Of a stretch of DNA of 64,000 bases, positions 17,074-64,000 are shown one piece after another; the stretch's first letter is position 1; each line of letters begins with the position of its first letter. The DNA lies in contig NC_088809.1 of assembly GCF_011386835.1 (NCBI RefSeq), forward strand, positions 6,696,001 through 6,760,000. The letters are read 5' to 3'. This DNA comes from Chrysemys picta bellii. Lineage: Eukaryota. The position numbers and the translations under genes were made by a program. The notes beneath the pieces were generated by a model, which was not told the DNA's origin, searched no databases, and saw only the letters and a program-made list of their open reading frames with translations.

Positions 17074-18737
17074 TAGGGCTGTCAAGCGATTAAAAAAAAT
17101 CTCGATTTAATCGTGCTGTTAAACAATAATAGAATTTAATTTATTTAAATATTTTTGGATGTTTTCTACATTTTCAAATATATTGATTTCAATTAGAGTG
17201 CAGAATACAAAGTGTACAGTGCTCACTTTATATTTATTTTTATTACAAATATTTTCACTGTAAAAAACAATAGAAATAGTATTTCTTAAATTCACCTACT
17301 ACAAGTACTGTAGTGCAATCGCTTTCTCATGAAAGTTGAATTTTCAAATGTAGAATTATGTACAAAAAATAACTGCATTCAAAAATAAAACAATGTACAA
17401 CTTTACAGCCTACAAGTCCACTCAGTCCTACTTCTTGTTCAGCCAATCGCTCAGACAAACAAGTTTGTTCACATTTGTGGGAGATTATGCTGCCCGCTTC
17501 TTGTTTACAATGTCAACTGAAAGTGAGAACAATGGCGCAGTTGTAGCCAGCATCGCAAGATATTTGCGTGCCAGATGCGCTAAAGATTCATATGTCCCTT
17601 CATGCTTCAACCACCATTCCAGAGGACGTGCTTCCATGCTAATGACGGGTTCTGCTTGATAACGATCCAAAGCAGTATGGACCGATGCATGTTCATTTTC
17701 ATCATCTGAGTCAGATGCCACCAGCAGAACATTGATTTTCTTTTTTGGTGATTCAAGTTCTGTAGTTTCCACATCTGAGTATTGCTCTTTTAAGACTTCT
17801 GAAAGCATGCTCCACACCTCATCCCTCTCAGATTTTGGAAGGCACTTCAGATTCTTAAACCTTGGGTCGAGTGCTGTAGCTATCTTTTGAAATCTCACAT
17901 TGGTACTTTCTTTGCGTTTTGTCATATCTGCAGTGAAAGCGTTCTTAAAATGAACGTGTGCTGGGTCACCATCCGAGACTGCTATATCATGAAATATATA
18001 GCAGAATGTGCGTAAAACACAGAGCAGCAGACATACAATACTCCCCCAAGGAGTTCAGTCATAAATTAATACTTTTTTTTTTAATGAGCGTCAGCAGCAT
18101 GGAAGCATGTCCTCTGGAATGGTGACCGAAGCATGAAGGGGCATACGAATGTTTAGCATATCTGACACGTAAATACCTTGCGATGCCAGCTACAAAAGTG
18201 TCATGCGAATGTCTGTTCTCACTTTCAGGTGACACTGTAAATAAGAATCGGGCAGCATTATCCTCCATGTATGTAAACAAACTGGTTTGTCTTAGCGATT
18301 GGCTGCACAAGAAGTAGGACTGAGTGGACTTGTAGGCTCTAAAGTTTTACATTGTTTTGTTTTTGAGTGAAGTTCTGTAACAAAAAAAAATCAAAATTTG
18401 TAATTTGCCCTTTCATGATAAAGAGATTGCACTACAGTACTTGTATTAGGTGAATTGAAAAATATCTTTTGTTTATAATTTTTACAGTGCAAATATCTGT
18501 AATAAAAATAATAATGTAAAGTGAACGCTGTACACTTTATATTCTGTCATAATTGAAATCAATATAGTTGAAAATGTAGAAAAACATCCAAAAATATTTA
18601 TAATAAATTTCAATTGGTATTTTATTATTGTTTAACAGTGTGATTAAAACTGCGATTAATTGTGATTAATTTTTTAAAATAGCAAATAATTTTTTTAGTT
18701 AATCGCGTGGATTAACTGTGATTAATCGACAGCCATA
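17074..18737. mobile_element. Foldback-type non-autonomous hAT with transposase C-terminal remnant
   Basis: Termini tagggctgtc / gacagccata; inverted arms 17074-17648 and 18089-18737; ORF 17485..17925(-) has LDPRFK and PLEWW..LAHLARKYL of the hAT dimerisation region. Confidence 0.9.
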
Positions 18738-43000: not shown

Positions 43001-45861
43001 TATGAACGGTCACAGACCAACTCAGATAAGGCTTTGCAAGTGTGCTAGCAGCCACTTGCTGCATGCTTACAAGGAAGAAAGAAAAGGAAACACCAAAGAA
43101 CGTATCCTGCTTAAGGATATAAACTTAAGATCAAAAGTTTGCCTGTGTTGTAATGGCCAAGGTAACTACTGGGAGAAGATCGTGTTTTTGATAACTTGTT
43201 AGTGATATTTAATCGTGTGTTGGATGGGAGGATAGGCAGGGAGGGCTATCCGTGATTTCTTTCCTCCCTGGCTCTCCATCGCTACCCTATCTGTGTGTTC
43301 TTTTCATGTACCTCTCACTCTTCTTAGTTTTAGATTAAAACTTAAGGTGACAGCATCATGGTTCTGCCATCTCTGGGTCTGAAATATTAATATGTGTCTG
43401 TAAAGAGTTCTTGCCATGGTACGTGGAAAGGAAAAAGTTAAAGAATTCTTCTGCCTTCATTTGTTCTGTTCTGTTTTATTTTTTTTTGTCCTTGCAGCTC
43501 TGCATTGCATTGCTATAAACAGCGCATACTTTGCCTTTGCATGACCCCAGAGACATAAGGCTAGAAGTTCATGCAGACCCCATCAGAGCCAGTGTAGGTT
43601 ACAAAGTTTTACCTCCATGAGAATCAAAAACACATAAGATATAAGTATAAAAAATGAGAGAAACAAGGTCTGCCATATGTATATCCTTTGAAATTCCAGA
43701 AACTAATAGTGTGGGGTGGTAAATCTGTAAATGGTTGATTCCTGTTCAGTGCTCAAGGGGAATGTGAAGATACTCCAAGGACCCTGCTAATATGCCGTGG
43801 GCAGAAATTATTTCCCTATCCCCACTTTGGCAGTTGTTGTATCCCTGTTACATAACATCTGGACCATAATGGTGATGGTACTACAGATGGTTTTAAACAA
43901 TCCTCTCTCAAAAGGTTTTGAATGTCTCTGTTGGAGCTGCCCAGATCTCACACAGATCTGTGCTGATCCCCAGGAGGCACTGAGATGGGATGCTTTGGGG
44001 GCACATTATGCTGCTGTTGATGATGGAATAATGATAGATATGTAGGAGCCGAAAAACATCATTAAATTATTTCTGAATGTTTCATGAGATGCTACCATAT
44101 TGAGAGACAACATGGGCCGGGGTAGGATGTTTGCTGTAGAGTTAGGACTGCTGGGTTTTATTCTTAGATCTGCTCCTGGCTTCTGGTTGACCTAGGGAAA
44201 GTTGCTTCAGCTCCGTGCCTCAGTTTCCCCATTGATAAAATGGGGATAATACTTAATGTACCTACTTTGTAAAGCACTTTAAGATATATACATGAAAAGA
44301 GCTTGGTGTTTGGTGTTATTATTATTATTATTCTATTACCAAAGGTCAAGGCTTCCTACAACTTGGGGTCCCCAAGCTGTGGCCCCATCAAACCTGCTAT
44401 TAGTCCAGCTCTGATCACTCATGTTTAGGGAGACCCCCTAAAAGTATCAACAGAAGTGCTGATTAGTAACTTAAGCTCTGTCTTGTGAATGCAGCAAACT
44501 ATTATAGATTGTCTCTCTTATTTAAAAGCACAAACCTCTTCTATAAAAACAGTCCACCAAGAGCGCAGTCAGAGAGATGTGTGTTAGTAGCTGTGGACTT
44601 TGAACCAAGTGGGAGATCTATTAGTTGCTGAATACTTTGAAAAGCAGAGGTTTGTTGTGTGTGTGCATCTGTACTAGATGTGGATGGGGAGGTTGATAGG
44701 AAGGAGGTTATTGGAAGCCTTAAGTGACAGAAGATCCACATCGGTCAGATTAAGCAGCTGCAACTGTACTGCAATGTCATTCTCAAAGGATGGATGTGGA
44801 AAAGGTAAATTACTGGACTGTTGATTTGGAGAATTAAAAAAACCCCTCATTGGGGTTAAAACCCCTCCATTTCAGTCACGTTCTATTCAGGTTTTAACAC
44901 TGTCTTCGTCACATTCAACATTTGCTGCTTTCAACTACTCTGGCCAGTGGCTCTCGGGCTGGGTTATCTTGTTGAAATCTGTATCCCTTTAACAAACTCT
45001 GTCACAGTGCAGCAGTATGTTAGATGCATCCGATAATATTGAATCTTTTTTCTTAATGATGCAGCCTACTCCTTTTTAGGATAAAAACGCTGAGCCTTCC
45101 TCACTACCTAAGGACTGTTGTGTTTATTTTTAACTTTGATATTTACATGGGAAAGGATATTATTGAGTAGTACTGCATTCCTCATCCAATATAAGCATAC
45201 AAAAGCCATCTGAATTTTTTGAAGTGCTGATTATAGATCATTATCTGGTATTAACACAGTCATCATCAGTGGAAAGTAAAATTTAATTAAATACATAAAA
45301 AAAGAACTATAAATGTCGGTTAATTCTTAAACAAATATATTGCTCTATCAGGCTAAAATAGCATAAGACAAAGAGATCCTGAATTCTTTCATTTCTTACA
45401 TTATAAAGAGACCATAGCATTATTAGAAGAAAAATAGAATAATTAGGTTACTTATAGTTGTATACCATTTAAATCAGCATAGTAGACAGGCAAAGAAAAT
45501 ACATTTTTACTGAATCTTTATTTCTAATTACATATAGAGGTAAAGTAAAACCTCTTGGATTTTCTTGGGGTGAAAAAATACTATAACCATAAAGGTAAAA
45601 TAAAACAAAACAGTCAGAATAAATCCACTTGTGATACCAAGCCATAAATGACCTGAGAGAGAAACAAACAAATACATACCTCGGATTTATCATATAGAAG
45701 CATTAAAGAGTTAGAACAGAATACAGTGCTATTCAAAATTCAAATAATCAAATATGAGTAACCGTGATACCCCGGGGTGGGCAGAACAGCATGGTCTTCT
45801 TACCTTCTGTTGCTGTCTTGGCAATGTGCAGAGAGAGCAGAACAAGGAAAAGCAATTCCAT
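18881..45861 (-). CDS. CA4: GPI-anchored carbonic anhydrase 4-type enzyme, 8 coding exons, 315 aa (span includes introns)
   Basis: Eight exons with GT-AG boundaries join in frame (58+54+171+152+93+64+164+192=948 nt): [315 protein letters not shown]. Motifs: QSPINI, NNGH, FHFHW, GSEH, ELHIVH, GSLTTP, NFRP; signal peptide; hydrophobic GPI tail. Intron phases 1,1,1,0,0,1,0 as in mammalian CA4. True orthologue versus CA4/CA15-family paralogue needs a phylogeny. Confidence 0.93.
19377..19565 (+). mobile_element. tRNA-derived tortoise PolIII/SINE with CR1-like tail
   Basis: A box TAGCTCAGTGG (19387), B box GAGTTCAATCC (19430), tail gggctggactcgatgacctttcaaggtcccttccagttcta shared with CR1 3' ends. 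Confidence 0.88.
20417..20577. mobile_element. Miniature hairpin Penelope-like insertion in CA intron 7
   Basis: Minus-strand PLE terminus followed by a short inverted copy (gccacaagtactcctgttct); 12-bp TSD TCTGAGATCCTT (20405-20416, 20578-20589). Confidence 0.8.
20885..21006. mobile_element. hAT MITE (TAGGGTGACCAGA family)
   Basis: Reverse-orientation relative of 7875-7999; perfect TSD TCACTGCT. Confidence 0.92.
21043..21206 (-). CDS. CA4: CA4-type gene exon 7 (..[22 protein letters not shown]..)
   Basis: 164 nt; acceptor ttgttttcctag, donor CAG|gtaatt; YxGSLTTP motif. Confidence 0.96.
21399..21664. mobile_element. GC-rich hAT MITE (CAGGGCCGGCT-like family)
   Basis: TIRs caggggcaactc / gagctgcccctg; TSD CTTGTGTG/CTTGTGTC. 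Confidence 0.85.
21732..21974. mobile_element. PIF/Harbinger-type MITE
   Basis: gggcaagtctac / gtgtagagcggacc termini; TGA/TTA flanks. Confidence 0.7.
22121..22184 (-). CDS. CA4: CA4-type gene exon 6 ([21 protein letters not shown])
   Basis: 64 nt; acceptor attgtttcag, donor AAAG|gtaagg; phases fit both neighbours. Confidence 0.92.
22769..22861 (-). CDS. CA4: CA4-type gene exon 5 (LHIVHRKEG...LAVLGFFIK)
   Basis: 93 nt; acceptor tgtattacag, donor AAG|gtaagt; third zinc-ligand His. Confidence 0.95.
23622..23773 (-). CDS. CA4: CA4-type gene exon 4 (VKVSL...EFHFHWG...[14 protein letters not shown])
   Basis: 152 nt; acceptor ttgtttctaccag, donor GAG|gtaggt; two zinc-ligand His. Lies inside track ORF 23565..23801. 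Confidence 0.96.
24808..24938. mobile_element. hAT MITE
   Basis: ctgtggttttcaacc / ggttaaaaccaatg; perfect TSD CTATAGAG. Confidence 0.85.
25316..25612. mobile_element. hAT MITE
   Basis: caggcctgcacaac / gttgtgcagacctg; TSD GTTTAGGC/GTTTAGAC. Confidence 0.85.
27130..27628 (+). mobile_element. piggyBac right-end remnant with Cys-rich C-terminal domain
   Basis: 27163-27291 encodes RCYIWSRERDRKIRQKCVKCKNVVCSEPVTYFCSICSKYLTI*; terminus AGGG|TTAA at 27621-27628. Confidence 0.7.
27913..28083 (-). CDS. CA4: CA4-type gene exon 3 (EPGVW...QSPINIVT...NNGHT)
   Basis: 171 nt; acceptor ccttttaaacag, donor ACGG|gtaagt; QSPINI and NNGH motifs. Confidence 0.95.
28752..28864 (-). mobile_element. Penelope-like terminus in CA intron 2
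   Basis: Reverse complement of the 11.1-kb family end; 10-bp TSD TTATATTGGC (28742-28751, 28865-28874). Confidence 0.8.
28805..28845 (-). ncRNA. Minimal hammerhead-like motif with canonical CUGAAGA core
   Basis: Minus strand: GCAC-CTGAAGA-A-GTGGG-tttttta-CCCAC-GAAA-GC-TT-ATGC. Confidence 0.55.
29202..29255 (-). CDS. CA4: CA4-type gene exon 2 ([18 protein letters not shown])
   Basis: 54 nt; acceptor tttctctgttgcag, donor GCAG|gtaatt; WCY motif plus second Cys. Confidence 0.93.
29775..30180 (-). mobile_element. CR1 LINE 3' fragment
   Basis: Track ORF 29845..30147 contains VRLWNALPHEVTEAKNLARFKKGLD, the CR1 ORF2 C-terminus. Confidence 0.75.
30440..30900 (+). mobile_element. Harbinger Myb/SANT accessory-gene remnant
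   Basis: TPVDRLSQIRRRKKRSWDD..FSEILQAS..ERTDRRKAQE..MELLHQQMRMLQTLV with stop and frameshift; resembles, from memory, the basic/coiled-coil region of turtle Harbinger ORF2. Confidence 0.6.
31670..31830 (-). mobile_element. Penelope-like pseudo-LTR fragment (relative of 6430-6570)
   Basis: ggccaacttctgttggtgag...aagctt...ttcaggtctggg is the reverse complement of the 6.4-6.5 kb sequence. Confidence 0.6.
32613..32780. mobile_element. GC-rich hAT MITE
   Basis: caggagcgcc / gccggccctg; TSD CCGGTTCA/CCGGTTAA. Confidence 0.75.
35384..36215. mobile_element. Truncated hAT-type element with C/T-rich low-complexity body
   Basis: Starts tagggtgaccaggtgtc; GC-rich, then pyrimidine-rich repeats; no matching right TIR found. 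Confidence 0.5.
38133..39019. mobile_element. Probable solo LTR in CA intron 1
   Basis: TGTGAT...ATCACA inverted termini (TG...CA), about 890 bp, non-coding; TSD not clean. Confidence 0.45.
41549..41763. repeat. Palindromic MITE-like element
   Basis: Arms ttctggaatcagagtgccttattcctgtttagctt / aagataaacaggaacaaggcactctgattccagaa around an AT-rich centre; gtgtagataaccc end is Harbinger-like. Confidence 0.65.
45804..45861 (-). CDS. CA4: CA4-type gene coding exon 1 (signal peptide [19 protein letters not shown])
   Basis: 58 coding nt, hydrophobic signal core, strong donor GAAG|GTAAGA, phase 1 matches exon 2, TATA box about 85 nt upstream. Confidence 0.85.
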
Positions 45862-48970: not shown

Positions 48971-50111
48971 TAGGGTGACCAGACGTCCCGATTTTATCGG
49001 GACAGTCCCGATATTTCCTTCTTTGTCCCGCGTCCCGACCGATGTTCGGTCGGGACGCGGGACAAAGAAGGAAATTTACCCTCTGCTCCGGCGCTCACGC
49101 CCCCCCAACCCCGACTCCGCCCCCTCCTTCCCCCATTGGATCTCTCAATGGAGGGAGGAGGTTAGGAGGAGGGTCGGGCAACTACCAGGAGCCTGGGAGG
49201 GGAAGGGAAAGTTGCCGCGGCCCCGCCGGGAAGGAGCCGCTGGAGCGCAGCCGAGTGGGAGAGGCGCGGGGCTCCCATGCCGGCGGCGGGACGCGCCGCA
49301 TGTGCCCACGGCGGGCTGGGGAGCGGGAGGCTCTGCAGGGCTGGGAAAAGCCCTGGCTCCTGCCCGTTGCCCAGCCTGGAGCCCCGGGGAGCCCCTCAGG
49401 AGACCGGCCGCTGCTGTGGAGGCAGCAGCCGGGGCTGGCTCTGGCCCGGGTGGGCAGCGTGGGCCGCCGGAGACACGCGGCGAAGAGAGGCTGCGGGGGC
49501 GAGACTTGTCCCAGGCAGGGAGGCCGGCGGACAGGGGTGAGGGGCCAGCCGGGGTCCCCATAAACTTCCCCGCCGCTGCCAGGGAGCCCCGCGCCTCTCT
49601 TGCTTGGCTGCGCTCCAGCGGCTCGCCCCGCCTGGAAGGAGCCGCTGGAGCGCAGCCGAGCGGGAGAGGCGTGGGGCTCCCTGCCGGCGGCGGGACGCGC
49701 TGCATGTGCCCATGGCAGGCTGGGGGGCAGGAGGCTCTGCAGGGCTGGGAAAAGCCCTGGCTCCTGCCCGTTGCCCAGCCTGGAGCCCCACAGGTGACCG
49801 GCCGCTGCTGTGGCTCGGCTGTGCCAGCCCTGGCCCCTTGCACGCCCGCGCCGTGGCCAGCCCCGGACTTTGTTTCTTGTCCCCCCCCCGCCCTCTTTAT
49901 CCCTAGCCCCTTCTGCATCGGGGCCAGCTTTTGCCCTGGGGTGGGCAGCACGTGCGCCCGGCGCGGCTGGGGCCTGCTAATGCCCCCCCCGCCCCTGCGA
50001 AACTGCTTTTTTTTTTTTTTTTTTTGGCTCCGCCGCCATTTTTTTTTTGCTCCGCCCCCTCCCCCCCCCCCCCGCGTCCCGATATTTCATCCCTGTGGTC
50101 TGGTCACCCTA
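48971..50111. mobile_element. Large CpG-rich hAT non-autonomous element with internal duplication
   Basis: TIRs tagggtgaccaga / tctggtcacccta; perfect TSD GAGAGAAC (48963-48970, 50112-50119); about 155-bp direct repeat at about 49230-49385 and 49635-49788. Confidence 0.92.
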
Positions 50112-50469
50112 GAGAGAACATGTTGCTTTGCTCCTGATTACACTGTGTTAAGGCTTTCTGCCTACTGGCTGGGAAAGCTGGAATATCCCTCCCAATAGGT
50201 GCAGGAAAACCTGGAGAGATCCAAGCTCCCAAGGTATCTTGTCTCTCCATTGAGTTAGCTCTTATCCTTCCCAGCAAGTCTGCTCTGCCGTGCTGCTACA
50301 ACCCCAGTACTTGTTCTGGAGTGAGGAAGGCTGGCAAACAGTTCCATCCAGACAGTGCCAAACACATTAATGCTGGTAGAGTGTCCCCTTGCTGGTTTGG
50401 AACAGGTCCTTTCCAAATTTGTTCATGAACTTGGGGTGCGGGGGTTGTTTGTTTGTCTGATCATTTATT

Positions 50470-50800: not shown

Positions 50801-52151
50801 AGCTTATTCCAGTAACAGATCATTTTAAGTGGGGCAACCAGAGAGATTTGCGGGGGTTGGCTTCTTAAGCCTTTTGGCTTAGTTCTTATGTGTTACCTGC
50901 TTAATATTTGTTCTGTGTTATACCTGAGAACTATATGTTGCATTATGTGCTCCAATAGGTCTTTACCATCAACTACTCCAATTCTATACCAACCTCCTTG
51001 CAGTCTTTCTGGTCTAGGACAGGAATGTGTGTGTATGAGTGAGTGATGTTTCCTTCTCAGAGATAATAAGGCAGCTGTAACAGAAAACTTCTTCTTTAGC
51101 TCAAGTGCTAGTGGCCTGTGTTTTTGAAACTAAAGGACAAGGCTTCTACTTCTAGCTCCTCAGGTATGTGCAGGTGGTTTATCTAGGCATTGTGTTGGCC
51201 TTTTACAGTACATAGATTTGTTACACTGCTTCTATTTTAAGACCAGTCCCTTGTGCCAAACATACCTCTAGTCTGAACGTGGGTATTTTGGTTCAGACAT
51301 AAGTCACAAAAAAGCAGTGATGTTGAGACAGATGGGTTTATGACTGCAAATACAGGAAGCATTCAGTCTTCTTTAGAGTTAAATTATAGGTAGGGGACTT
51401 TGTTGCATGACACCAAGTTCCCTTTTTCAGTGCTGTATATATCAATGTCTTTCTCTTTTTAGACAACCTCATAAATTCTACGCAGGTTAAAAATTACAGC
51501 CCTGCATCTGAGTGAATTGTACAGGCTGTACCATACCTAAATACCTGTAAAAATGTGAGCTTTAGTCTCTCTCAGACTCAGTTCCCTATCTCAAAAATGG
51601 GAATAATAGTACTTCCTTCCCTTACAGGGGTGCTGTGAGGATATGTGAAAGATACATGCAAGGTTTTGAGATGCTCTGATATAGCAGTAATGGGAGTCAT
51701 ATACGTACCTAAATTAGATAGATATATTGTAAATTTTCCTTCTTTTGATCTCTAAATCGATTTTTAGAAAATTCTTGATGAATTATAAGTGTGATTCTTG
51801 TCAGTTATAATAATTACTACCATTTATTGAGAGCTGATGAGTGACAGCGTGCTGTACAGAACATGGTGCAGGTAGTATAATCATTGCAAACTGTAATATT
51901 CCAGAAATTTTTTTTTTTTCCCTTTTAAGGCTGTCCATGTCCACGAGATCGAAAGGTAAAAGGATTCACAGGACCTGCCAAGGCCATTTTAGTGGATGTG
52001 TAGAGCTGGGAGAAGATTTTCAGTAAGAGTCTTTGGTCTTAATCCACTTGGTTAATTAGGTATAGTTAATCAGGAATAATTCCATGTATAGACAAGCCCT
52101 TAGGTTCATGTGTGCCTACATCACTTTTAAAAATGGAACTTGCACTTCTAA

Positions 52152-52565
52152 CAGGGCCGGCTCTGGCTTTTTTGCCACCCCAGGCAAAAAAGCCTCCCGC
52201 CACCCCCCGCTCCCCGGTGGGGAGCGTGGCAGGGGAGGGCGGCGAGCCCGGCCGCGGCCCCGCTCTCCCCGGCCGGAGCACCGCAGGGAGGGCGGCGAGC
52301 CCGGCCGGGGCCCTGCTCTCCCCGACCGGCCGGAGCGCCATGAGGAGGGCGGAGAGCCCGGTTGCGGGCCCGCTGTCCCCGACCGGCCGGAGCATCGGGG
52401 GGAGGGTGGTGAGCCTGCTGTGGCTCCGCTCTCCCCGGCCGGCCGGAGCGCTGGGGGAGGGCGGTGAGCCCGGCCGCGGCCCCGCTCTCCCCGGGTGAGC
52501 GCTGCCCCCCTCCAGGTGCCGCCCCAAACATATGCTTGGAGGGCTGGTGCCTGGAGCCGGCCCTG
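52152..52565. mobile_element. GC-rich hAT MITE with internal tandem repeats (about 50 bp)
   Basis: TIRs cagggccggctc / gagccggccctg; TSD ACTTCTAA/ACTCCTAA; repeated ccgctctcccc..ggccggagc..gggagggcgg unit. Confidence 0.88.
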
Positions 52566-53483
52566 ACTCCTAACTAACTTAGGCACATTTAGAGAAAGTT
52601 AAATCTGATAACTAGATTAGTATAGCCTTGGGTCATGTGCTTCTTTGACTGCACAAGGTTTTTACTTCCTTCTTTTGCTTCTCCGTCTGTGGCTTGTAGC
52701 TAATATAGTTCTCTTATCTGGCTGCTGAACAATATCCTGAGATGTTAAAGCCTGATAAGCATCTTGGATTCAAATTCCTGCTGAGGGACACACATTTATG
52801 GCTAGAACATTTTCAGTTAACTGAAAAACTAGGAAGTAGAAATTCTTCAGCGGGAAGGGGTGGGGGAGGAGCAAAACCTGTTTTGAAAGAGTCCCAGCAA
52901 AAATGTTGGAAAGAGATTATACACCCGACTTTTGTCTTCCTATCCAAAGAGGAAGGCTTTAATCCACATTAATTAAAACAAAAATTGGGTAAATAGGCTC
53001 CTTATTTTTACTACCCCCTTTGCCGAACGTTCCTTCTTTGCAGGCCTGCTGGATCTAGATTGAAATGCTGAATAGATGTGTATTCTTATGTCAAAACCGT
53101 GCTGGAGGTCATGGCAAGCAGGAATGGTATGTTCTTCCTTTATAAGACCAAGCCTGCTCTTTGTCTTTCATAATTTGGGACAGGATATTTGCTGTCCACA
53201 GTTTAAAACATATTTTTAATAGAATGAGGGGATGGTTGGGAAAAATAGTTATTGTATGTTGGGGCTGTGGAATTTCATAGCAAGAAAGGTCTTGGGACTC
53301 AAGCATAGAATGGTGAGTCAGACCTGGGTTCTGTTCCTATTTCTGCCACTGTCTTCCTGTGTTTTCTTGGGCAAATCACTTAACCTCTCAGTGCTTCACT
53401 TTCCCTATCTGTAAAATAAGCATAAACAACTGGAGGGATAACACTGGGTGATGTGAGGTGCAATAGAGGCACAAAGTATTATC

Positions 53484-54676
53484 AAAACAGGAGTACTTGT
53501 GGCACCTTAGAGACTAACAAATTTATTAGAGCATAAGCTTTCGTGGGCTACTGCCCACTTCTTCGGATGCATATAGAGTGGAACATATATTGAGGAGATA
53601 TATATACACACATACAGAGAGCATGAACAGGTGGGAGTTGTCTTACCAACTCTGAGAGGCCAATTAAGTAAGAGGAAAAAATGTTTTTTTGAAGTGATAA
53701 TCAAGCTAGCCCAGTACAGACAGTTTGATAAGAAGTGTGAGAATACTTACAAGGGGAGATAGATTCAATGTTTGTAATGTGCGTAGAGACTGTCCGGTTT
53801 GGCCAATGTACATGGCAGAGGGGCATTGCTGGTATTAGTGAAGTAGTAGAGAGAGCTTACAGACAACCCCCCAGCCTAAAGCAAATACTCACCAGCAACC
53901 ACACATCACTGAACAAAAACACTGACCCAGGAACCTATCCTTGTAACAAAGCCCGATGCCAACTCTGTCCACATATCTATTCAAGTGACATCATCATAGG
54001 ACCTAATCACATCAGCCATACCATCAGGGGCTCGTTCACCTGCACATCTACCAATGTGATATATGCCATCATGTGCCAGCAATGCCCCTCTGCCATGTAC
54101 ATTGGCCAAACCGGACAGTCTCTACGCAAAAGAATTAATGGACACAAATCTGACATCAAGAATCATAATACTCAAAAACCAGTGGGAGAACACTTTAACC
54201 TGTCTGGCCATTCAATGACAGACCTGCGGGTGGCTATCTTACAACAGAAAAACTTCAAAAACAGACTCCAACGAGAGGCTGCTGAGCTGGAATTGATATG
54301 CAAACTAGATACAATCAACTCAGGATTGACCAGGAATGGCTGAGCCATTACAAACATTGAATCTATCTCCCCTTGTAAGTATTCTCACACTTCTTATCAA
54401 ACTGTCTGTACTGGGCTAGCTTGATTATCACTTCAAAAAAACATTTTTTCTCTTACTTAATTGGCCTTTCAGAGTTGGTAAGACAACTCCCATCTGTTCA
54501 TGCTCTCTGTATGTGTGTATATGTATCTCCTCAATATATGTTCCATTCTATATGCATCCGAAGAAGTGGGTTGTAGCCCACGAAAGCTTATGCTCTAATA
54601 AATTTGTTAGTCTCTAAGGTGCCACAAGTACTCCTTTCTTTTTGCGGGTACAGACTAACACGGCTGCTACTCTGAA
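53484..54676 (+). mobile_element. Penelope-like retroelement with inverted 5' pseudo-LTR and GIY-YIG endonuclease fragment
   Basis: 13-bp TSD ACAAAGTATTATC (53471-53483, 54677-54689); 53484-53779 is the reverse complement of the 3' pLTR; 53855-54343 encodes AYRQPPSLKQIL..CTSTNVIYAIMCQQCPSAMYIGQTGQSLRKRINGH..QREAAELELI (GIY-YIG). Confidence 0.93.
54554..54593 (+). ncRNA. Minimal type-I hammerhead-ribozyme-like motif in PLE pLTR
   Basis: GCAT-CCGAAGA-A-GTGGG-ttgtag-CCCAC-GAAA-GC-TT-ATGC; mirror copy at 53531-53570(-). The core has C at position 4 instead of U. Confidence 0.55.
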
Positions 54677-61587: not shown

Positions 61588-62550
61588 ATGAACAGATACC
61601 TGAACTGTTCTGTCAACAGCACTGAAATCTGGAGCTCACATCTAGTCCTTGCACTGGGTATCCCTCAACTGATCATTAATGTAATATCTGTGATCTTCAA
61701 CTGTGCGGTCATCATTACTATATTGTCTACAAAGGATCTGCATAAACCCATCTTTATTCTTTTCTGCAATTTGGCTTTTTCTGATCTTCTCACCAGCTCT
61801 TCAGGCTTTTGGATTTCAATGCTGTTCATCACTAACCCAGAAAGCACAATCTTTGGATCCAAGGATCTCCTCATAGCTTATGCCTTTTATACTATGTCTA
61901 TTCTGTCCACCATCTATAACTTAGTCAGCATTGGAATTGAGCGCTACTTGGCTGTGGCAGAAAGCCTCAGGATGAGATGCAGGGTTTCCCGAAACCAGTC
62001 GCTGGCTGCATCTCTAATTAACTGGGCACTTGCCTTCTTTTTGAGTTGCATACCTCTAGTGGGGTGGAACTGCTTGAATAACAAAGAAAACATGTCTGCT
62101 CTCTACAGCCCCTTTTGTGTTGACTACCTCATCTTAATCACCATCCCCAACTGTGTGGTGGCCTTTATCTTGCCTCTGTTCACGTACCTTAGCATCATTG
62201 CCATATTGAGGAAACAGAAGTTCACAATGGGAGCGTGTGGACAAGCCAATGGCATCTACAAATCAGCTGAAGTCCAGGTTTCCAGAACTAGTGTCTTTAT
62301 CTGGCTTCTGGCACTGGTTTCCTATGCACCTTTTGTTGTAGGAGTCGTGTTAGATGCAGCCAACCGTCTGTGCCCCACTGACCTGTATCCAAATGTCTAT
62401 GTGTTTCGAAACTGTACTGCTATGATGATCACCATGAACTCTTTGGGGAACCCCATCATCTACACACTCCAAGTTAAAACATTGGGAAGTAAACTCAAGT
62501 TTTTGAAGTGCCCTGCCAGCAACCGGGTGCAAGTCATTGGGAATATCTGA
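61588..62550 (+). CDS. Intronless class A GPCR, EDG (LPAR1-3/S1PR)/GPR3-6-12-like, probable orphan, 320 aa
   Basis: Kozak ccaccATG; seven hydrophobic segments; N1.50, LAFSD (D2.50), ERY, W4.50, GWNC, P6.50, NPIIY; N-terminal sequons NCS and NST; no Cys at the top of TM3, as in lipid-receptor/MECA GPCRs. Confidence 0.93.
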   Translation: MNRYLNCSVNSTEIWSSHLVLALGIPQLIINVISVIFNCAVIITILSTKDLHKPIFILFCNLAFSDLLTSSSGFWISMLFITNPESTIFGSKDLLIAYAFYTMSILSTIYNLVSIGIERYLAVAESLRMRCRVSRNQSLAASLINWALAFFLSCIPLVGWNCLNNKENMSALYSPFCVDYLILITIPNCVVAFILPLFTYLSIIAILRKQKFTMGACGQANGIYKSAEVQVSRTSVFIWLLALVSYAPFVVGVVLDAANRLCPTDLYPNVYVFRNCTAMMITMNSLGNPIIYTLQVKTLGSKLKFLKCPASNRVQVIGNI

Positions 62551-64000
62551 CCTACTCTGGAATTGCATATGACTAACATAAAACTGTCTGTCTGTCTATC
62601 TAATCGTTTTCGGCATTCATTAAGTTCTTCAGCTGGACTGTGGTTCTCTCTTGAAAAGCCACACTCAGGTTCAAGCATGCCAAAGATTGGCCTACAACCA
62701 TGGGTCAATTTCAGAACTAGGGCAAGTGGACAGCTCCCTGTTCCTACTTTGGCAGAGGCAGTGCTGGAACTGCTTTTAACTCTTCCATAGGCACCAACAT
62801 CACTGATTTGAGATCTTCAGGTCCTTGCTTTGTAATGCACTTGTGGAGAAATTCAGACTGAGTGCATGGGGGGAGCAAAAAAACCAAACAAGGAGAGCTT
62901 TTTTTAATGAGCAAAAACTGATTGTGAAATGCAATCATCCAAATGGTCTGTTAGGTGCTTCTCTGGATGCACCCGTTTGTCTTGCTCTGATAAAATAGCA
63001 ATGCGGCTGTTTTGAAAGGAAAGTTTTGGGAGTTAAATCAATTTTCTTTACATTATTTTAATTTTACCTGATTATTCAGTTAATCCTTGACCCTGAGCAC
63101 AGGAATTGTGAGTAGCAGTTATTTATCTGCTGACAGTTCTGTGTCTGTCTGCCTGATTTGTCTGTCCCTTTATTGGAAACATACGATTTATTTTGCATTA
63201 AGAGATAAAAATAAATCCATGGATACTATTTACTTTGCCTTTGGAAATGTGCTTCTGCTGTGCTTGCATTACTCGCAGCCTTTCTTATTTTTTGTATTGT
63301 TTCATGTTTTTAAAGGAGACGTTGTGTTCATTTGCATGAAAATTTTCAGAAATAGAAAAAATGAAAGTTTCAGCTATTTATTTATAATCGGTCTTTTCTG
63401 TGTGCAAAAATGTATTTCTTTTTCTATTAACATAGCACTCACCATAGTTTACTGTAACCCTTTTAATTGCAAAATATAGATGAATTGTCTCTCTTTGGTG
63501 AAACATTTGTGATTCTATACTTTCTACCTTTTTATTTCTTCATATTTCTGCTTTTCACACTGCACCCACTTTAAAACTTGAACTATAATCTCAGTTAAAA
63601 ACACACTTCAGTTTTACAATATCAAGACTGCAATGGAGTTAATCATGTACCAAGAAAATTGTTGGAGTTTTTAAATAAAAAGAGCAAACATTTTATAACG
63701 GGTATTAAAGTTTGTTCATCTGCATCTAATTAAAAAGAGGGAGGGTCCCCTCCCCAAAATTGGATATTTGAATAGTTTATTTTTTCATATTTCCTTACGT
63801 AGACTAGACTAATTTTTCAACTTTGCCCTTTATTGTTCAAAATAAACTTTTGGGATACATTTTTTGGGGGGGAATTTTGGGATAGAAGTTTTGAGTAATC
63901 TGAGGTAGTCCTAAAGCACTACATGAATGGTTGTATATACAGAAATTTGCACTTAGAAATCCTTATTACACAAGCTCACCTTTTTGATTGAAAAGACTAC

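What the first reader, a model, noticed from the sequence alone, without database searches (positions are those of the whole stretch)
61588..62550. Probable orphan EDG-like GPCR with the lysophospholipid-binding and toggle-switch residues rewritten
Seen: intact intronless 320-aa 7TM ORF with GWNC, ERY and NPIIY. Counting back from R3.50 gives A3.28 and Y3.29. TM6 reads ALVSYAP (A6.44, S6.47, Y6.48). ECL2 is GWNCLNNKENMSALYSPFC. Known: LPAR1-3 and S1PRs use R3.28 plus Q/E3.29 for the lipid head group, carry FxxCWxP in TM6, and have GWNC-x5/6-C in ECL2. Here the second Cys position is Met and a Cys appears later. Inference: not a true LPA or S1P receptor, although automated annotation would probably label it so. 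It may be a separate receptor lineage, possibly absent from mammals, with a different ligand or unusual basal activity. This is the best candidate in the window for an undescribed signalling system.
Basis: partly seen in the sequence, partly recalled or inferred. Interest (0 to 1): 0.78.

Follow-up and report, generated by a model that had tools for sequence, protein, structure and literature searches.

The report
Orphan EDG-like receptor lost in mammals
This is an intact, selectively maintained gene for a G-protein-coupled receptor related to the lysophospholipid (LPA/S1P) receptors. It belongs to an old lineage of bony vertebrates that was not found in mammals, lacks the residues LPA/S1P receptors use to hold their ligands, and has no known ligand.

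Summary
Window 61588-62550 (+) is an intact, intronless 320-aa class A GPCR ORF with GWNC, ERY and NPIIY, A3.28/Y3.29, S6.47/Y6.48, and an ECL2 whose second Cys is Met with a Cys further on.

It is the turtle member of a conserved orthogroup:
- It occurs in turtles, crocodilians, birds, squamates, amphibians, coelacanth, gar, paddlefish, bichir and characiform/gymnotiform teleosts.
- Sequence databases label it inconsistently: LPAR1/2/3-like, S1PR1/2-like, MC5R-like.
- No mammal appears among the 120 best hits.
- An exhaustive search finds only 5 representatives below E 1e-30; the next hit is 26% identical.
- The microsynteny carbonic anhydrase / GPCR / ZNHIT3 / MYO19 holds from gar to ostrich.
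- dN/dS is 0.13-0.27.
- Y3.29, Y6.48, a basic 7.35 and the two ECL2 cysteines are invariant in 45 sequences.

It never nests inside the LPAR1-3 or S1PR clades. Whether it is a third EDG branch, the sister of LPAR1-3, or deeper depends on taxon sampling.

No functional study was found. A 2019 Ensembl catalogue may list the clade as 'GPR119B', but I could not verify that mapping, and GPR119 is not a close relative.

Verdict: a real, uncharacterised orphan receptor lineage of a known kind. Interest is moderate. The ligand and signalling are inferred, not shown.

The parts
61588..62550 (+). Single-exon coding sequence of the 320-aa receptor (stop codon included)
   Evidence: ORF list. Pfam 7tm_1 E 6.9e-27. 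Identical to an NCBI protein named 'LPAR3-like [Trachemys scripta elegans]'.
61603..61623 (+). Short N-terminus: sequons N6-C-S and N10-S-T, with conserved Cys7 (61606-61608). TM1 starts near residue 17, so there is no long N-terminal cap like that of LPAR1.
   Evidence: Sequons and C7 (43/45). AF2 helix 17-47. LPAR1 aligns only from its residue ~59.
61876..61881 (+). A97 (3.28) and Y98 (3.29), where LPARs have R-Q and S1PRs have R-E
   Evidence: Alignments. Y98 is in 45/45 orthologs; position 97 is A/P/V/L and never basic.
61939..61947 (+). E118-R119-Y120 (E/DRY motif, 3.49-3.51)
   Evidence: E 45/45, R 44/45.
62062..62118 (+). ECL2 from G159-W-N-C162 to C177. It holds the N168-M-S170 sequon where EDG receptors have N-C-S, and the invariant S170, Y173, P175 and C177.
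   Evidence: C162 and C177 are in 45/45. All paralogs have their second Cys 5-7 residues after GWNC instead.
62311..62331 (+). TM6 core A242-L-V-S245-Y246-A-P248 (A6.44, S6.47, Y6.48, P6.50)
   Evidence: Y246 and P248 45/45, S245 41/45, A242 37/45. The LPAR, S1PR, CNR and GPR3/6/12 rows that cover TM6 have W at 6.48.
62371..62373 (+). Cys262 in ECL3, a possible disulfide partner of Cys7
   Evidence: C262 is in 43/45. One lizard sequence lacks both C7 and C262. The pairing is inferred, not measured.
62404..62412 (+). F273-R274-N275 at the top of TM7 (7.34-7.36). A conserved basic residue lies next to the position of LPAR1 K7.36.
   Evidence: R/K in 45/45, N in 44/45. Alignment to LPAR1 E-K.
62449..62463 (+). 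N288-P-I-I-Y292 (NPxxY)
   Evidence: P289 and Y292 45/45, N288 42/45.
63210..63215 (+). First AATAAA/ATTAAA downstream of the stop codon; a candidate polyadenylation signal (uncertain)
   Evidence: Pattern scan. Low-depth contigs of run X2 lie on 61796-62184, 62609-62787 and 63126-63276, and on nothing unique upstream.

Best explanation
**What it is.** The ORF is a working gene for an orphan class A G-protein-coupled receptor. It represents a distinct, ancient lineage of the EDG/MECA lipid-receptor cluster. The lineage was present in the ancestor of bony vertebrates, is kept in sauropsids, amphibians, coelacanth and some ray-finned fishes, and is absent from mammals as far as these databases show.

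**What is shown.**
- It keeps the machinery a class A receptor needs to switch on a G protein: N1.50, D2.50, E/DRY, W4.50, Y5.58, N7.45, NPxxY.
- It has the cluster's hallmarks: GWNC in ECL2, no Cys3.25, no Pro5.50.
- Its ligand site is built differently from LPA and S1P receptors. There is no basic 3.28, and Tyr replaces Gln/Glu at 3.29. There is no long N-terminal cap. Ser-Tyr replaces Cys-Trp at 6.47-6.48 and Ala replaces Phe at 6.44. ECL2 has a relocated second cysteine. Conserved Arg/Lys7.35, Asn7.36 and Asp6.58 sit at the pocket mouth.

**What is inferred.** It binds a hydrophobic, probably lipid-like agonist. The polar head of that agonist would be held by Y3.29, R/K7.35 and N7.36 rather than by R3.28. 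Tyr6.48 would act as a lineage-specific activation switch. The identity of the ligand, the G-protein preference and the basal activity are unknown.
For: **Real and intact.**

**Orthologs.** 56-86% identical across tetrapods and coelacanth. Fish members appear.

**Isolation.** Only 5 representatives fall below E 1e-30 among 1.84 billion. The next hit is E 1.7e-20 at 26% identity.

**Orthology by synteny.** Carbonic anhydrase / GPCR / ZNHIT3 / MYO19 in ostrich, alligator and gar. ZNHIT3 is next door in four more loci.

**Purifying selection.** NG86 dN/dS is 0.13-0.27 for unsaturated pairs, and all ORFs are intact.

**Signature residues.** Invariant or nearly so in 45 sequences, and different from all LPAR, S1PR, CNR and GPR3/6/12 rows.

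**Own clade.** 100/99 or 100/100 support, outside the LPAR1-3 and S1PR crown clades.

**Fold.** AF2 model with pLDDT 79.5 and pTM 0.79, seven helices plus helix 8. The nearest solved folds are LPA1, CB1, CB2 and S1PR1.

**Profile scores.** LPAR1 128.7 bits, S1PR1 96, CNR1 92.6.
Against: - No direct functional evidence exists here: no ligand, no coupling, no tissue.
- Evidence of transcription is weak. There is one 161-nt contig in a polyA RNA library of another organism, plus low-depth contigs of a run whose RNA status is a guess.
- Absence from mammals rests on annotated proteins, not on a search of mammalian genomes.
- The deeper phylogenetic place changes with taxon sampling (against 65, 67).
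- The conserved basic 7.35 could still hold a phosphate, so a lysophospholipid ligand is not excluded.
Confidence: 0.75

Rival explanations
1. It is a genuine LPA (or other lysophospholipid) receptor: a fourth, divergent EDG-type LPAR. It would hold the phosphate head group with R/K7.35, N7.36 and Y3.29 instead of R3.28 and Q3.29.
For: - LPAR1 is by far the best solved relative: 87.6 bits for the single sequence and 128.7 bits for the profile against 96 for S1PR1.
- ECL2 aligns without gaps to that of LPAR1 and shares GWNC, E-N-x-S and L-Y-S.
- Without the long amphioxus rows, the best tree makes it the sister of LPAR1-3 (74/82).
- A basic residue is invariant one position from LPAR1 K7.36.
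Against: - R3.28 and Q3.29 are absent in all 45 orthologs. Established mutagenesis on EDG receptors makes them the head-group pair; see the abstract of PMC514652, listed.
- The N-terminus is about 16 residues, so the capping helix that contributes contacts in LPAR1 is missing.
- With amphioxus rows, a clade with the LPARs is rejected (AU p 0.007).
- Identity to LPAR1 is only about 24-27%.
Confidence: 0.15
2. It is a mainly ligand-independent, constitutively active receptor, like GPR3/6/12 and GPR185. On this reading the changes at 6.44, 6.47 and 6.48 set a high basal tone.
For: - The core switch residues are rewritten: A6.44, S6.47 and Y6.48 are conserved.
- Relatives in the same cluster (GPR3/6/12) are known for constitutive activity; this is general knowledge and was not tested here.
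- The C-terminal tail is very short.
Against: - Extracellular and pocket-mouth residues are as strictly conserved as the core: Y3.29, R/K7.35, N7.36, D6.58, and the ECL2 residues S170, Y173, P175 and C177. That is what a ligand site under selection looks like.
- It does not group with GPR3/6/12.
Confidence: 0.1
3. It is a decaying or non-functional copy (a processed pseudogene of an LPAR or S1PR) whose 'rewritten' residues are drift.
For: It is intronless and differs at residues that are essential in its named relatives.
Against: - The ORF is intact in every species examined. dN/dS is 0.13-0.27.
- The same substitutions are fixed from gar to birds.
- Microsynteny has been conserved since the gar-tetrapod ancestor.
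Confidence: 0.01

Closest known systems
LPAR1-3 (EDG-type lysophosphatidic acid receptors)
   Same: - Best sequence and profile match and best structural match.
- GWNC in ECL2, and an ECL2 of the same length with E-N-x-S and L-Y-S.
- No Cys3.25. E/DRY and NPxxY present.
- Possible sister group in one data set.
   Different: - A/P/V/L at 3.28 and Tyr at 3.29 instead of Arg-Gln.
- Asn at 7.36 instead of Lys, with the basic residue at 7.35.
- Ser-Tyr instead of Cys-Trp at 6.47-6.48, and Ala instead of Phe at 6.44.
- The second ECL2 Cys is moved by 8 positions.
- The N-terminus is about 16 residues without a cap, and ECL3 is 6-7 residues longer.
- It lies outside the LPAR1-3 crown in all trees.
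S1PR1-5 (sphingosine 1-phosphate receptors)
   Same: Same cluster, same GWNC-type ECL2, similar fold.
   Different: No R3.28 or E3.29, no CWxP, a different ECL2 disulfide pattern. Not nested in the S1PR clade.
GPR3/6/12, GPR185 (GPRx) and teleost 'GPR186'
   Same: Orphan or constitutively active members of the same cluster. GPR185 is also missing from placental mammals according to PMC6504862.
   Different: GPR3/6/12, including the cluster that NCBI names GPR186, form their own 100%-supported clade away from this lineage. They keep W6.48 and a near GWxC-Cys ECL2. No GPR185 sequence was in the tree. The Xenopus members of this lineage are not named GPR185.
'GPR119B' of the Ensembl GPCR cartography (PMC6504862)
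   Same: Among that paper's non-human MECA clades, this one fits the taxon pattern best: gar plus 2 reptiles plus 3 birds, no mammals.
   Different: The mapping of its reference protein to this lineage could not be verified. If it is the same clade, the name misleads: no GPR119 chain is among the 60 best PDB matches of the profile, so GPR119 scores below rhodopsin. This lineage also carries the EDG-type GWNC loop.
Amia ocellicauda protein P0125 ('S1PR2-like')
   Same: Sister of the whole lineage in one tree (99/98). It shares Y6.48 and K7.35-N7.36.
   Different: It is a singleton on a long branch, with no relatives found by the word search. It is 26% identical, keeps an EDG-type GWNC-x7-CC loop, and lacks Y3.29.

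Membership tests
Class A (rhodopsin-like) GPCR | 7tm_1 profile match and seven-helix fold | tested here: met
   Pfam PF00001 E 6.9e-27, 95 bits against a cut-off of 30.5. The AF2 model has 7 helices plus helix 8, pTM 0.79.
Class A (rhodopsin-like) GPCR | Activation microswitches N1.50, D2.50, E/DRY, W4.50, Y5.58, NPxxY | tested here: met
   N38, D66, E118, Y200, P289 and Y292 are in 45/45; R119 and W146 in 44/45.
Class A (rhodopsin-like) GPCR | Trp6.48 in CWxP | tested here: not met
   S245-Y246-A-P248; Tyr in 45/45. Several functional class A receptors lack W6.48 (general knowledge), so this does not exclude membership.
MECA / EDG-type lipid receptor cluster | GW(N)C motif at the start of ECL2, and no Cys3.25-ECL2 disulfide | tested here: met
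   G159, W160 and C162 are in 45/45. Position 94 (3.25) is L/M/I/P/V and never Cys.
MECA / EDG-type lipid receptor cluster | Closest sequence and fold relatives are LPAR, S1PR and CNR | tested here: met
LPAR1-3 | Arg3.28 and Gln3.29 head-group pair | tested here: not met
   A97 (A/P/V/L across orthologs) and Y98 (45/45).
LPAR1-3 | Lys7.36 and an N-terminal capping helix with basic residues | tested here: not met
   N275 at 7.36 (44/45), with R/K at 7.35 instead. The N-terminus is about 16 residues.
LPAR1-3 | ECL2 GWNC followed by Cys within 5-7 residues | tested here: not met
   Met169 (V/L/A/M across orthologs) sits at that place; the Cys is at +15.
LPAR1-3 | Nesting inside the LPAR1-3 clade | tested here: not met
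   It lies outside the LPAR crown. A sister relation is rejected in one data set (AU p 0.007) and weakly favoured in another (74/82).
LPAR1-3 | Activation by LPA | not testable with these tools
   Needs a cell assay.
S1PR1-5 | Arg3.28 and Glu3.29; nesting in the S1PR clade | tested here: not met
   It lies outside the S1PR clade. OG+S1PR is not the best tree, but it is not rejected in the reduced set (p 0.28).
GPR3/6/12/185 | Nesting in the GPR3/6/12 clade | tested here: not met
   The GPR3/6/12 rows form a separate clade with 100/100 support. No GPR185 sequence was available.
GPR119 / melanocortin receptors | Closest similarity to GPR119 or MC1-5R | tested here: not met
   MC5R scores 75.6 bits against 128.7 for LPAR1. 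No GPR119 chain is among the best 60, so it scores below rhodopsin at 73.5 bits. Neither family could be put in the tree, because no tool supplied their sequences.

The most novel reading that the evidence does not exclude
The lineage is the receptor of a lipid or lipid-like mediator not covered by the known LPA/S1P/cannabinoid systems. It would read the ligand through a Tyr3.29 / Arg7.35 / Tyr6.48 pocket. That would make it a signalling axis of non-mammalian vertebrates that disappeared in the mammalian stem, where the CA4-ZNHIT3 neighbourhood is no longer contiguous. The human gene positions are from general knowledge and were not tested here.
Probability: 0.35. Interest if true: 0.65.

Novelty: new variant of a known kind. 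Interest (0 to 1): 0.5.

Why it matters
The gene shows that the EDG-type lipid receptor family has a further, deeply conserved branch that mammals appear to lack, and that databases file under at least six different wrong names. Studies in chicken, Xenopus, reptiles or characiform fishes that take 'LPAR1-B-like' or 'S1PR2-like' at face value will mis-assign LPA/S1P biology to it.

The conserved Tyr at the toggle position, together with the absence of the 3.28/3.29 head-group pair, makes it a natural experiment. It can show how this receptor fold recognises ligands and switches on.

Deorphanising it is directly feasible: it is a single exon and short, and many orthologs are available. It is, however, one of dozens of non-mammalian orphan GPCR clades, so the interest is moderate rather than high.

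Tried and rejected
**Identities ruled out**
- GPR186: rejected. NCBI's GPR186 is the teleost GPR3-like cluster, in the GPR3/6/12 clade.
- GPR185/GPRx: unlikely. The Xenopus members of this lineage are unnamed or called LPAR1-A-like, and the lineage is far from GPR3/6/12. No GPR185 sequence was at hand to test directly.
- GPR119 paralog: not supported by similarity.
- Pseudogene: rejected.

**Searches that gave little**
- I looked for melanocortin and GPR119 representatives among the 150 best representatives by motif and found none. Four unlabelled representatives were checked against the PDB: one was an EDG-like receptor (P0162) and the other three were adenosine- or amine-like. So those two families are missing from the trees.
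- RNA evidence: the runs found were mostly of guessed type and kept as contigs, with no joints, starts or ends, so they are only suggestive.
- Literature searches for a functional description under several names found nothing.
- Amia P0125 was searched for relatives to define a sister family; none were found, and its locus has no called neighbours.
- A search for the carbonic anhydrase gene in the window gave only weak matches at 45.6-45.9 kb.

Full report
**1. The observation**

The window holds an uninterrupted ORF at 61588..62550 on the + strand, 320 codons plus stop. The upstream frame is closed by stop codons. The start Met is the one used by the orthologs. The protein matches Pfam 7tm_1 over residues 38-292 (E 6.9e-27).

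- Counting back from R119 = 3.50 gives A97 = 3.28 and Y98 = 3.29.
- The ungapped HMMER alignment to human LPAR1 and a MAFFT alignment with paralogs added confirm this. A-Y lies under R-Q of the LPARs and R-E of the S1PRs.
- S245-Y246-x-P248 lies under C-W-x-P, and A242 under F6.44.
- In ECL2, Met169 sits where the Cys of the EDG 'ENCS' stands, and a Cys follows at residue 177.

**2. What it is**

The exact protein is on record as 'lysophosphatidic acid receptor 3-like [Trachemys scripta elegans]'. The 120 best relatives are all orthologs at 56-86% identity, from turtles, crocodilians, many birds, squamates, amphibians and the coelacanth. Their automatic names disagree with one another: LPAR1-A-like, LPAR1-B-like, LPAR2-like, LPAR3-like, S1PR1-like, S1PR2-like, MC5R-like. 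No mammal is among them.

An exhaustive HMMER scan of 1.84 billion representatives shows how isolated the group is. Only five representatives score below E 1e-30, and the next hit is E 1.7e-20 at 26% identity.

Those five are:
- a frog representative of the tetrapod cluster;
- a bird model;
- spotted gar;
- a gymnotiform teleost;
- a chondrostean-type contig whose gene model is fused to ZNHIT3.

A second word search adds characiforms, paddlefish and bichir. The lineage therefore goes back at least to the ancestor of bony vertebrates. It was not seen in cartilaginous fishes, cyclostomes, most teleosts or mammals.

**3. Orthology and selection**

In ostrich, alligator and gar the gene lies between a carbonic anhydrase gene and ZNHIT3-MYO19. 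ZNHIT3 is the neighbour in Trachemys, Carettochelys, Rhineura and the chondrostean-type contig as well. In Pelodiscus, ZNHIT3 is on the other side. A characiform has different neighbours.

All coding sequences fetched are intact. Nei-Gojobori dN/dS is 0.13-0.27 for pairs whose dS is not saturated, with turtle-turtle pairs at 0.18-0.27. The gene is under purifying selection.

**4. Conserved anatomy**

In a 45-sequence alignment (A2) the conservation is as follows:

| Group | Residues | Conservation |
|---|---|---|
| Invariant | N1.50, D2.50, E3.49, Y5.58, P6.50, P7.50, Y7.53, Y3.29, Y6.48, G159, W160, C162, S170, Y173, P175, C177 | 45/45 |
| Always basic | position 7.35 (40 R, 5 K) | 45/45 |
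| Nearly invariant | R3.50, W4.50, N7.36, D6.58 | 44/45 |
| Nearly invariant | S6.47 | 41/45 |
| Nearly invariant | C7 and C262 | 43/45 each |
| Nearly invariant | N7.45 | 43/45 |

Position 3.28 is never basic (A/P/V/L). Position 3.25 is never Cys. Position 5.50 is Ala or Val, not Pro.

The unusual residues are therefore fixed features of a working protein, not drift. The extracellular face is as constrained as the core.

The AlphaFold2 model (mean pLDDT 79.5, pTM 0.79) has TM1 starting at residue 17, so there is no N-terminal capping helix. Its nearest solved folds are LPA1, CB1, CB2 and S1PR1. One lizard sequence lacks both C7 and C262.

**5. Phylogenetic place**

In a 91-row quick tree and a 41-row careful tree (LG+C20 PMSF), the orthogroup is monophyletic (100/99) on a long stem. 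It lies outside a well-supported LPAR+S1PR clade (99/98). It groups weakly with amphioxus receptors and with a singleton from Amia. On that data set the AU test rejects orthogroup+LPAR (p 0.007) and orthogroup+LPAR+S1PR (p 0.0098).

When the long amphioxus, Amia and teleost rows are left out, the picture changes:
- The orthogroup joins LPAR and S1PR (80/89), to the exclusion of GPR3/6/12 and CNR.
- The best tree makes it the sister of LPAR1-3 (74/82).
- The alternatives are not rejected (p 0.28 and 0.40).

The safe statement is this: it is never nested within the LPAR1-3, S1PR, CNR or GPR3/6/12 crown clades, and whether it is a third EDG branch, the sister of the LPARs, or deeper is unresolved.

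Profile scores agree with an EDG affinity: LPAR1 128.7 bits, S1PR1 96, CNR1 92.6, MC5R 75.6, rhodopsin 73.5, GPR3 73.5. No GPR119 chain is among the best 60. Melanocortin receptors and GPR119 could not be placed in the trees, because no tool supplied their sequences.

**6. How it most likely works**

Shown: an intact, constrained class A receptor with all G-protein activation microswitches and the EDG-type ECL2 start.

Inferred:
- It binds a hydrophobic ligand, as its relatives do.
- It holds the ligand's polar end with Y3.29, R/K7.35, N7.36 and perhaps D6.58, rather than with R3.28 and Q/E3.29 plus the N-terminal cap.
- It uses Tyr6.48 in place of the Trp toggle.

An LPA-type ligand held by R7.35 remains possible (about 0.15). 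A mainly constitutive receptor is also possible (about 0.1). A pseudogene is excluded.

**7. What is known**

No paper describing this lineage functionally was found. NCBI's 'GPR186' is a teleost GPR3-like gene and is not this lineage.

The Ensembl GPCR cartography of 2019 (PMC6504862) lists seven MECA clades without human orthologs. The one called 'GPR119B' (gar, 2 reptiles, 3 birds, no mammals) fits the distribution best. The gar protein of this lineage comes from the Ensembl-derived proteome, so it should be somewhere in that catalogue. I could not verify the identifier mapping. If the two are the same clade, the name is not supported by similarity.

The lineage may thus have been noticed once as a clade, but it has not been characterised.

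**8. Expression**

One run of a polyA RNA library from another organism holds a 161-nt contig inside the ORF. A run of the same species label, whose RNA status is only a guess, has perfect low-depth contigs on the ORF and on 62609-62787 and 63126-63276. It has nothing on unique upstream sequence. This suggests a transcript with a 3' UTR of roughly 700 nt, but it is not proof.

**9. Verdict**

- It is a new variant of a known kind: an orphan EDG-like receptor with a rebuilt ligand site and switch, lost in mammals.
- Interest is moderate. It is directly testable and widely mis-annotated, but it is one of many non-mammalian orphan GPCR clades.

Noticed in passing
L012:10001-10933 (Amia ocellicauda, protein P0125): A singleton 'S1PR2-like' receptor with no relatives in the word search. 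It sits as sister of the whole lineage (99/98, long branch). It shares Y6.48 and K7.35-N7.36 but keeps an EDG-type GWNC-x7-CC loop. It may be a fast-evolving paralog or a long-branch artefact.
   Followed up: partly
L003:1-2181 (Pelodiscus sinensis): ZNHIT3 lies upstream of the receptor gene on the opposite strand. In the other sauropsids and in gar it lies downstream on the same strand. This is a local inversion or an assembly issue.
   Followed up: no
L011:3265-8984: The gene model P0124 joins the N-terminal half of the receptor to a ZNHIT3 C-terminal domain. This looks like an annotation fusion of two neighbouring genes.
   Followed up: no
window 48975-50198 and 52066-52586: GC-rich stretches carry long overlapping ORFs on both strands and Pro/Gly/Arg-rich translations. 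They could be a CpG island or a GC-rich repeat between the receptor and the upstream gene.
   Followed up: no
window 53768-54343 (+): A 191-aa ORF whose text resembles a GIY-YIG endonuclease domain.
   Followed up: no
window 17485-17925 (-): A 146-aa ORF that reads like the C-terminal dimerisation region of a hAT-type transposase. It is probably a transposon remnant.
   Followed up: no
window 45617-45860 (-): Weak tblastn matches (E 1e-5 to 1e-7) to the edges of the ostrich and alligator loci where a carbonic anhydrase gene is called. This may be the first exon region of the upstream neighbour.
   Followed up: partly
L010 (Salminus brasiliensis) and proteins P0286-P0290, P0123: The otophysan teleost members sit on a long branch (about 1.1 changes per site) and are 29-34% identical to the turtle protein. 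Four of them have A6.47, and all have K7.35. The one locus examined (Salminus) has a different neighbour, a myotubularin-related gene. They are faster-evolving copies in a new genomic place.
   Followed up: partly
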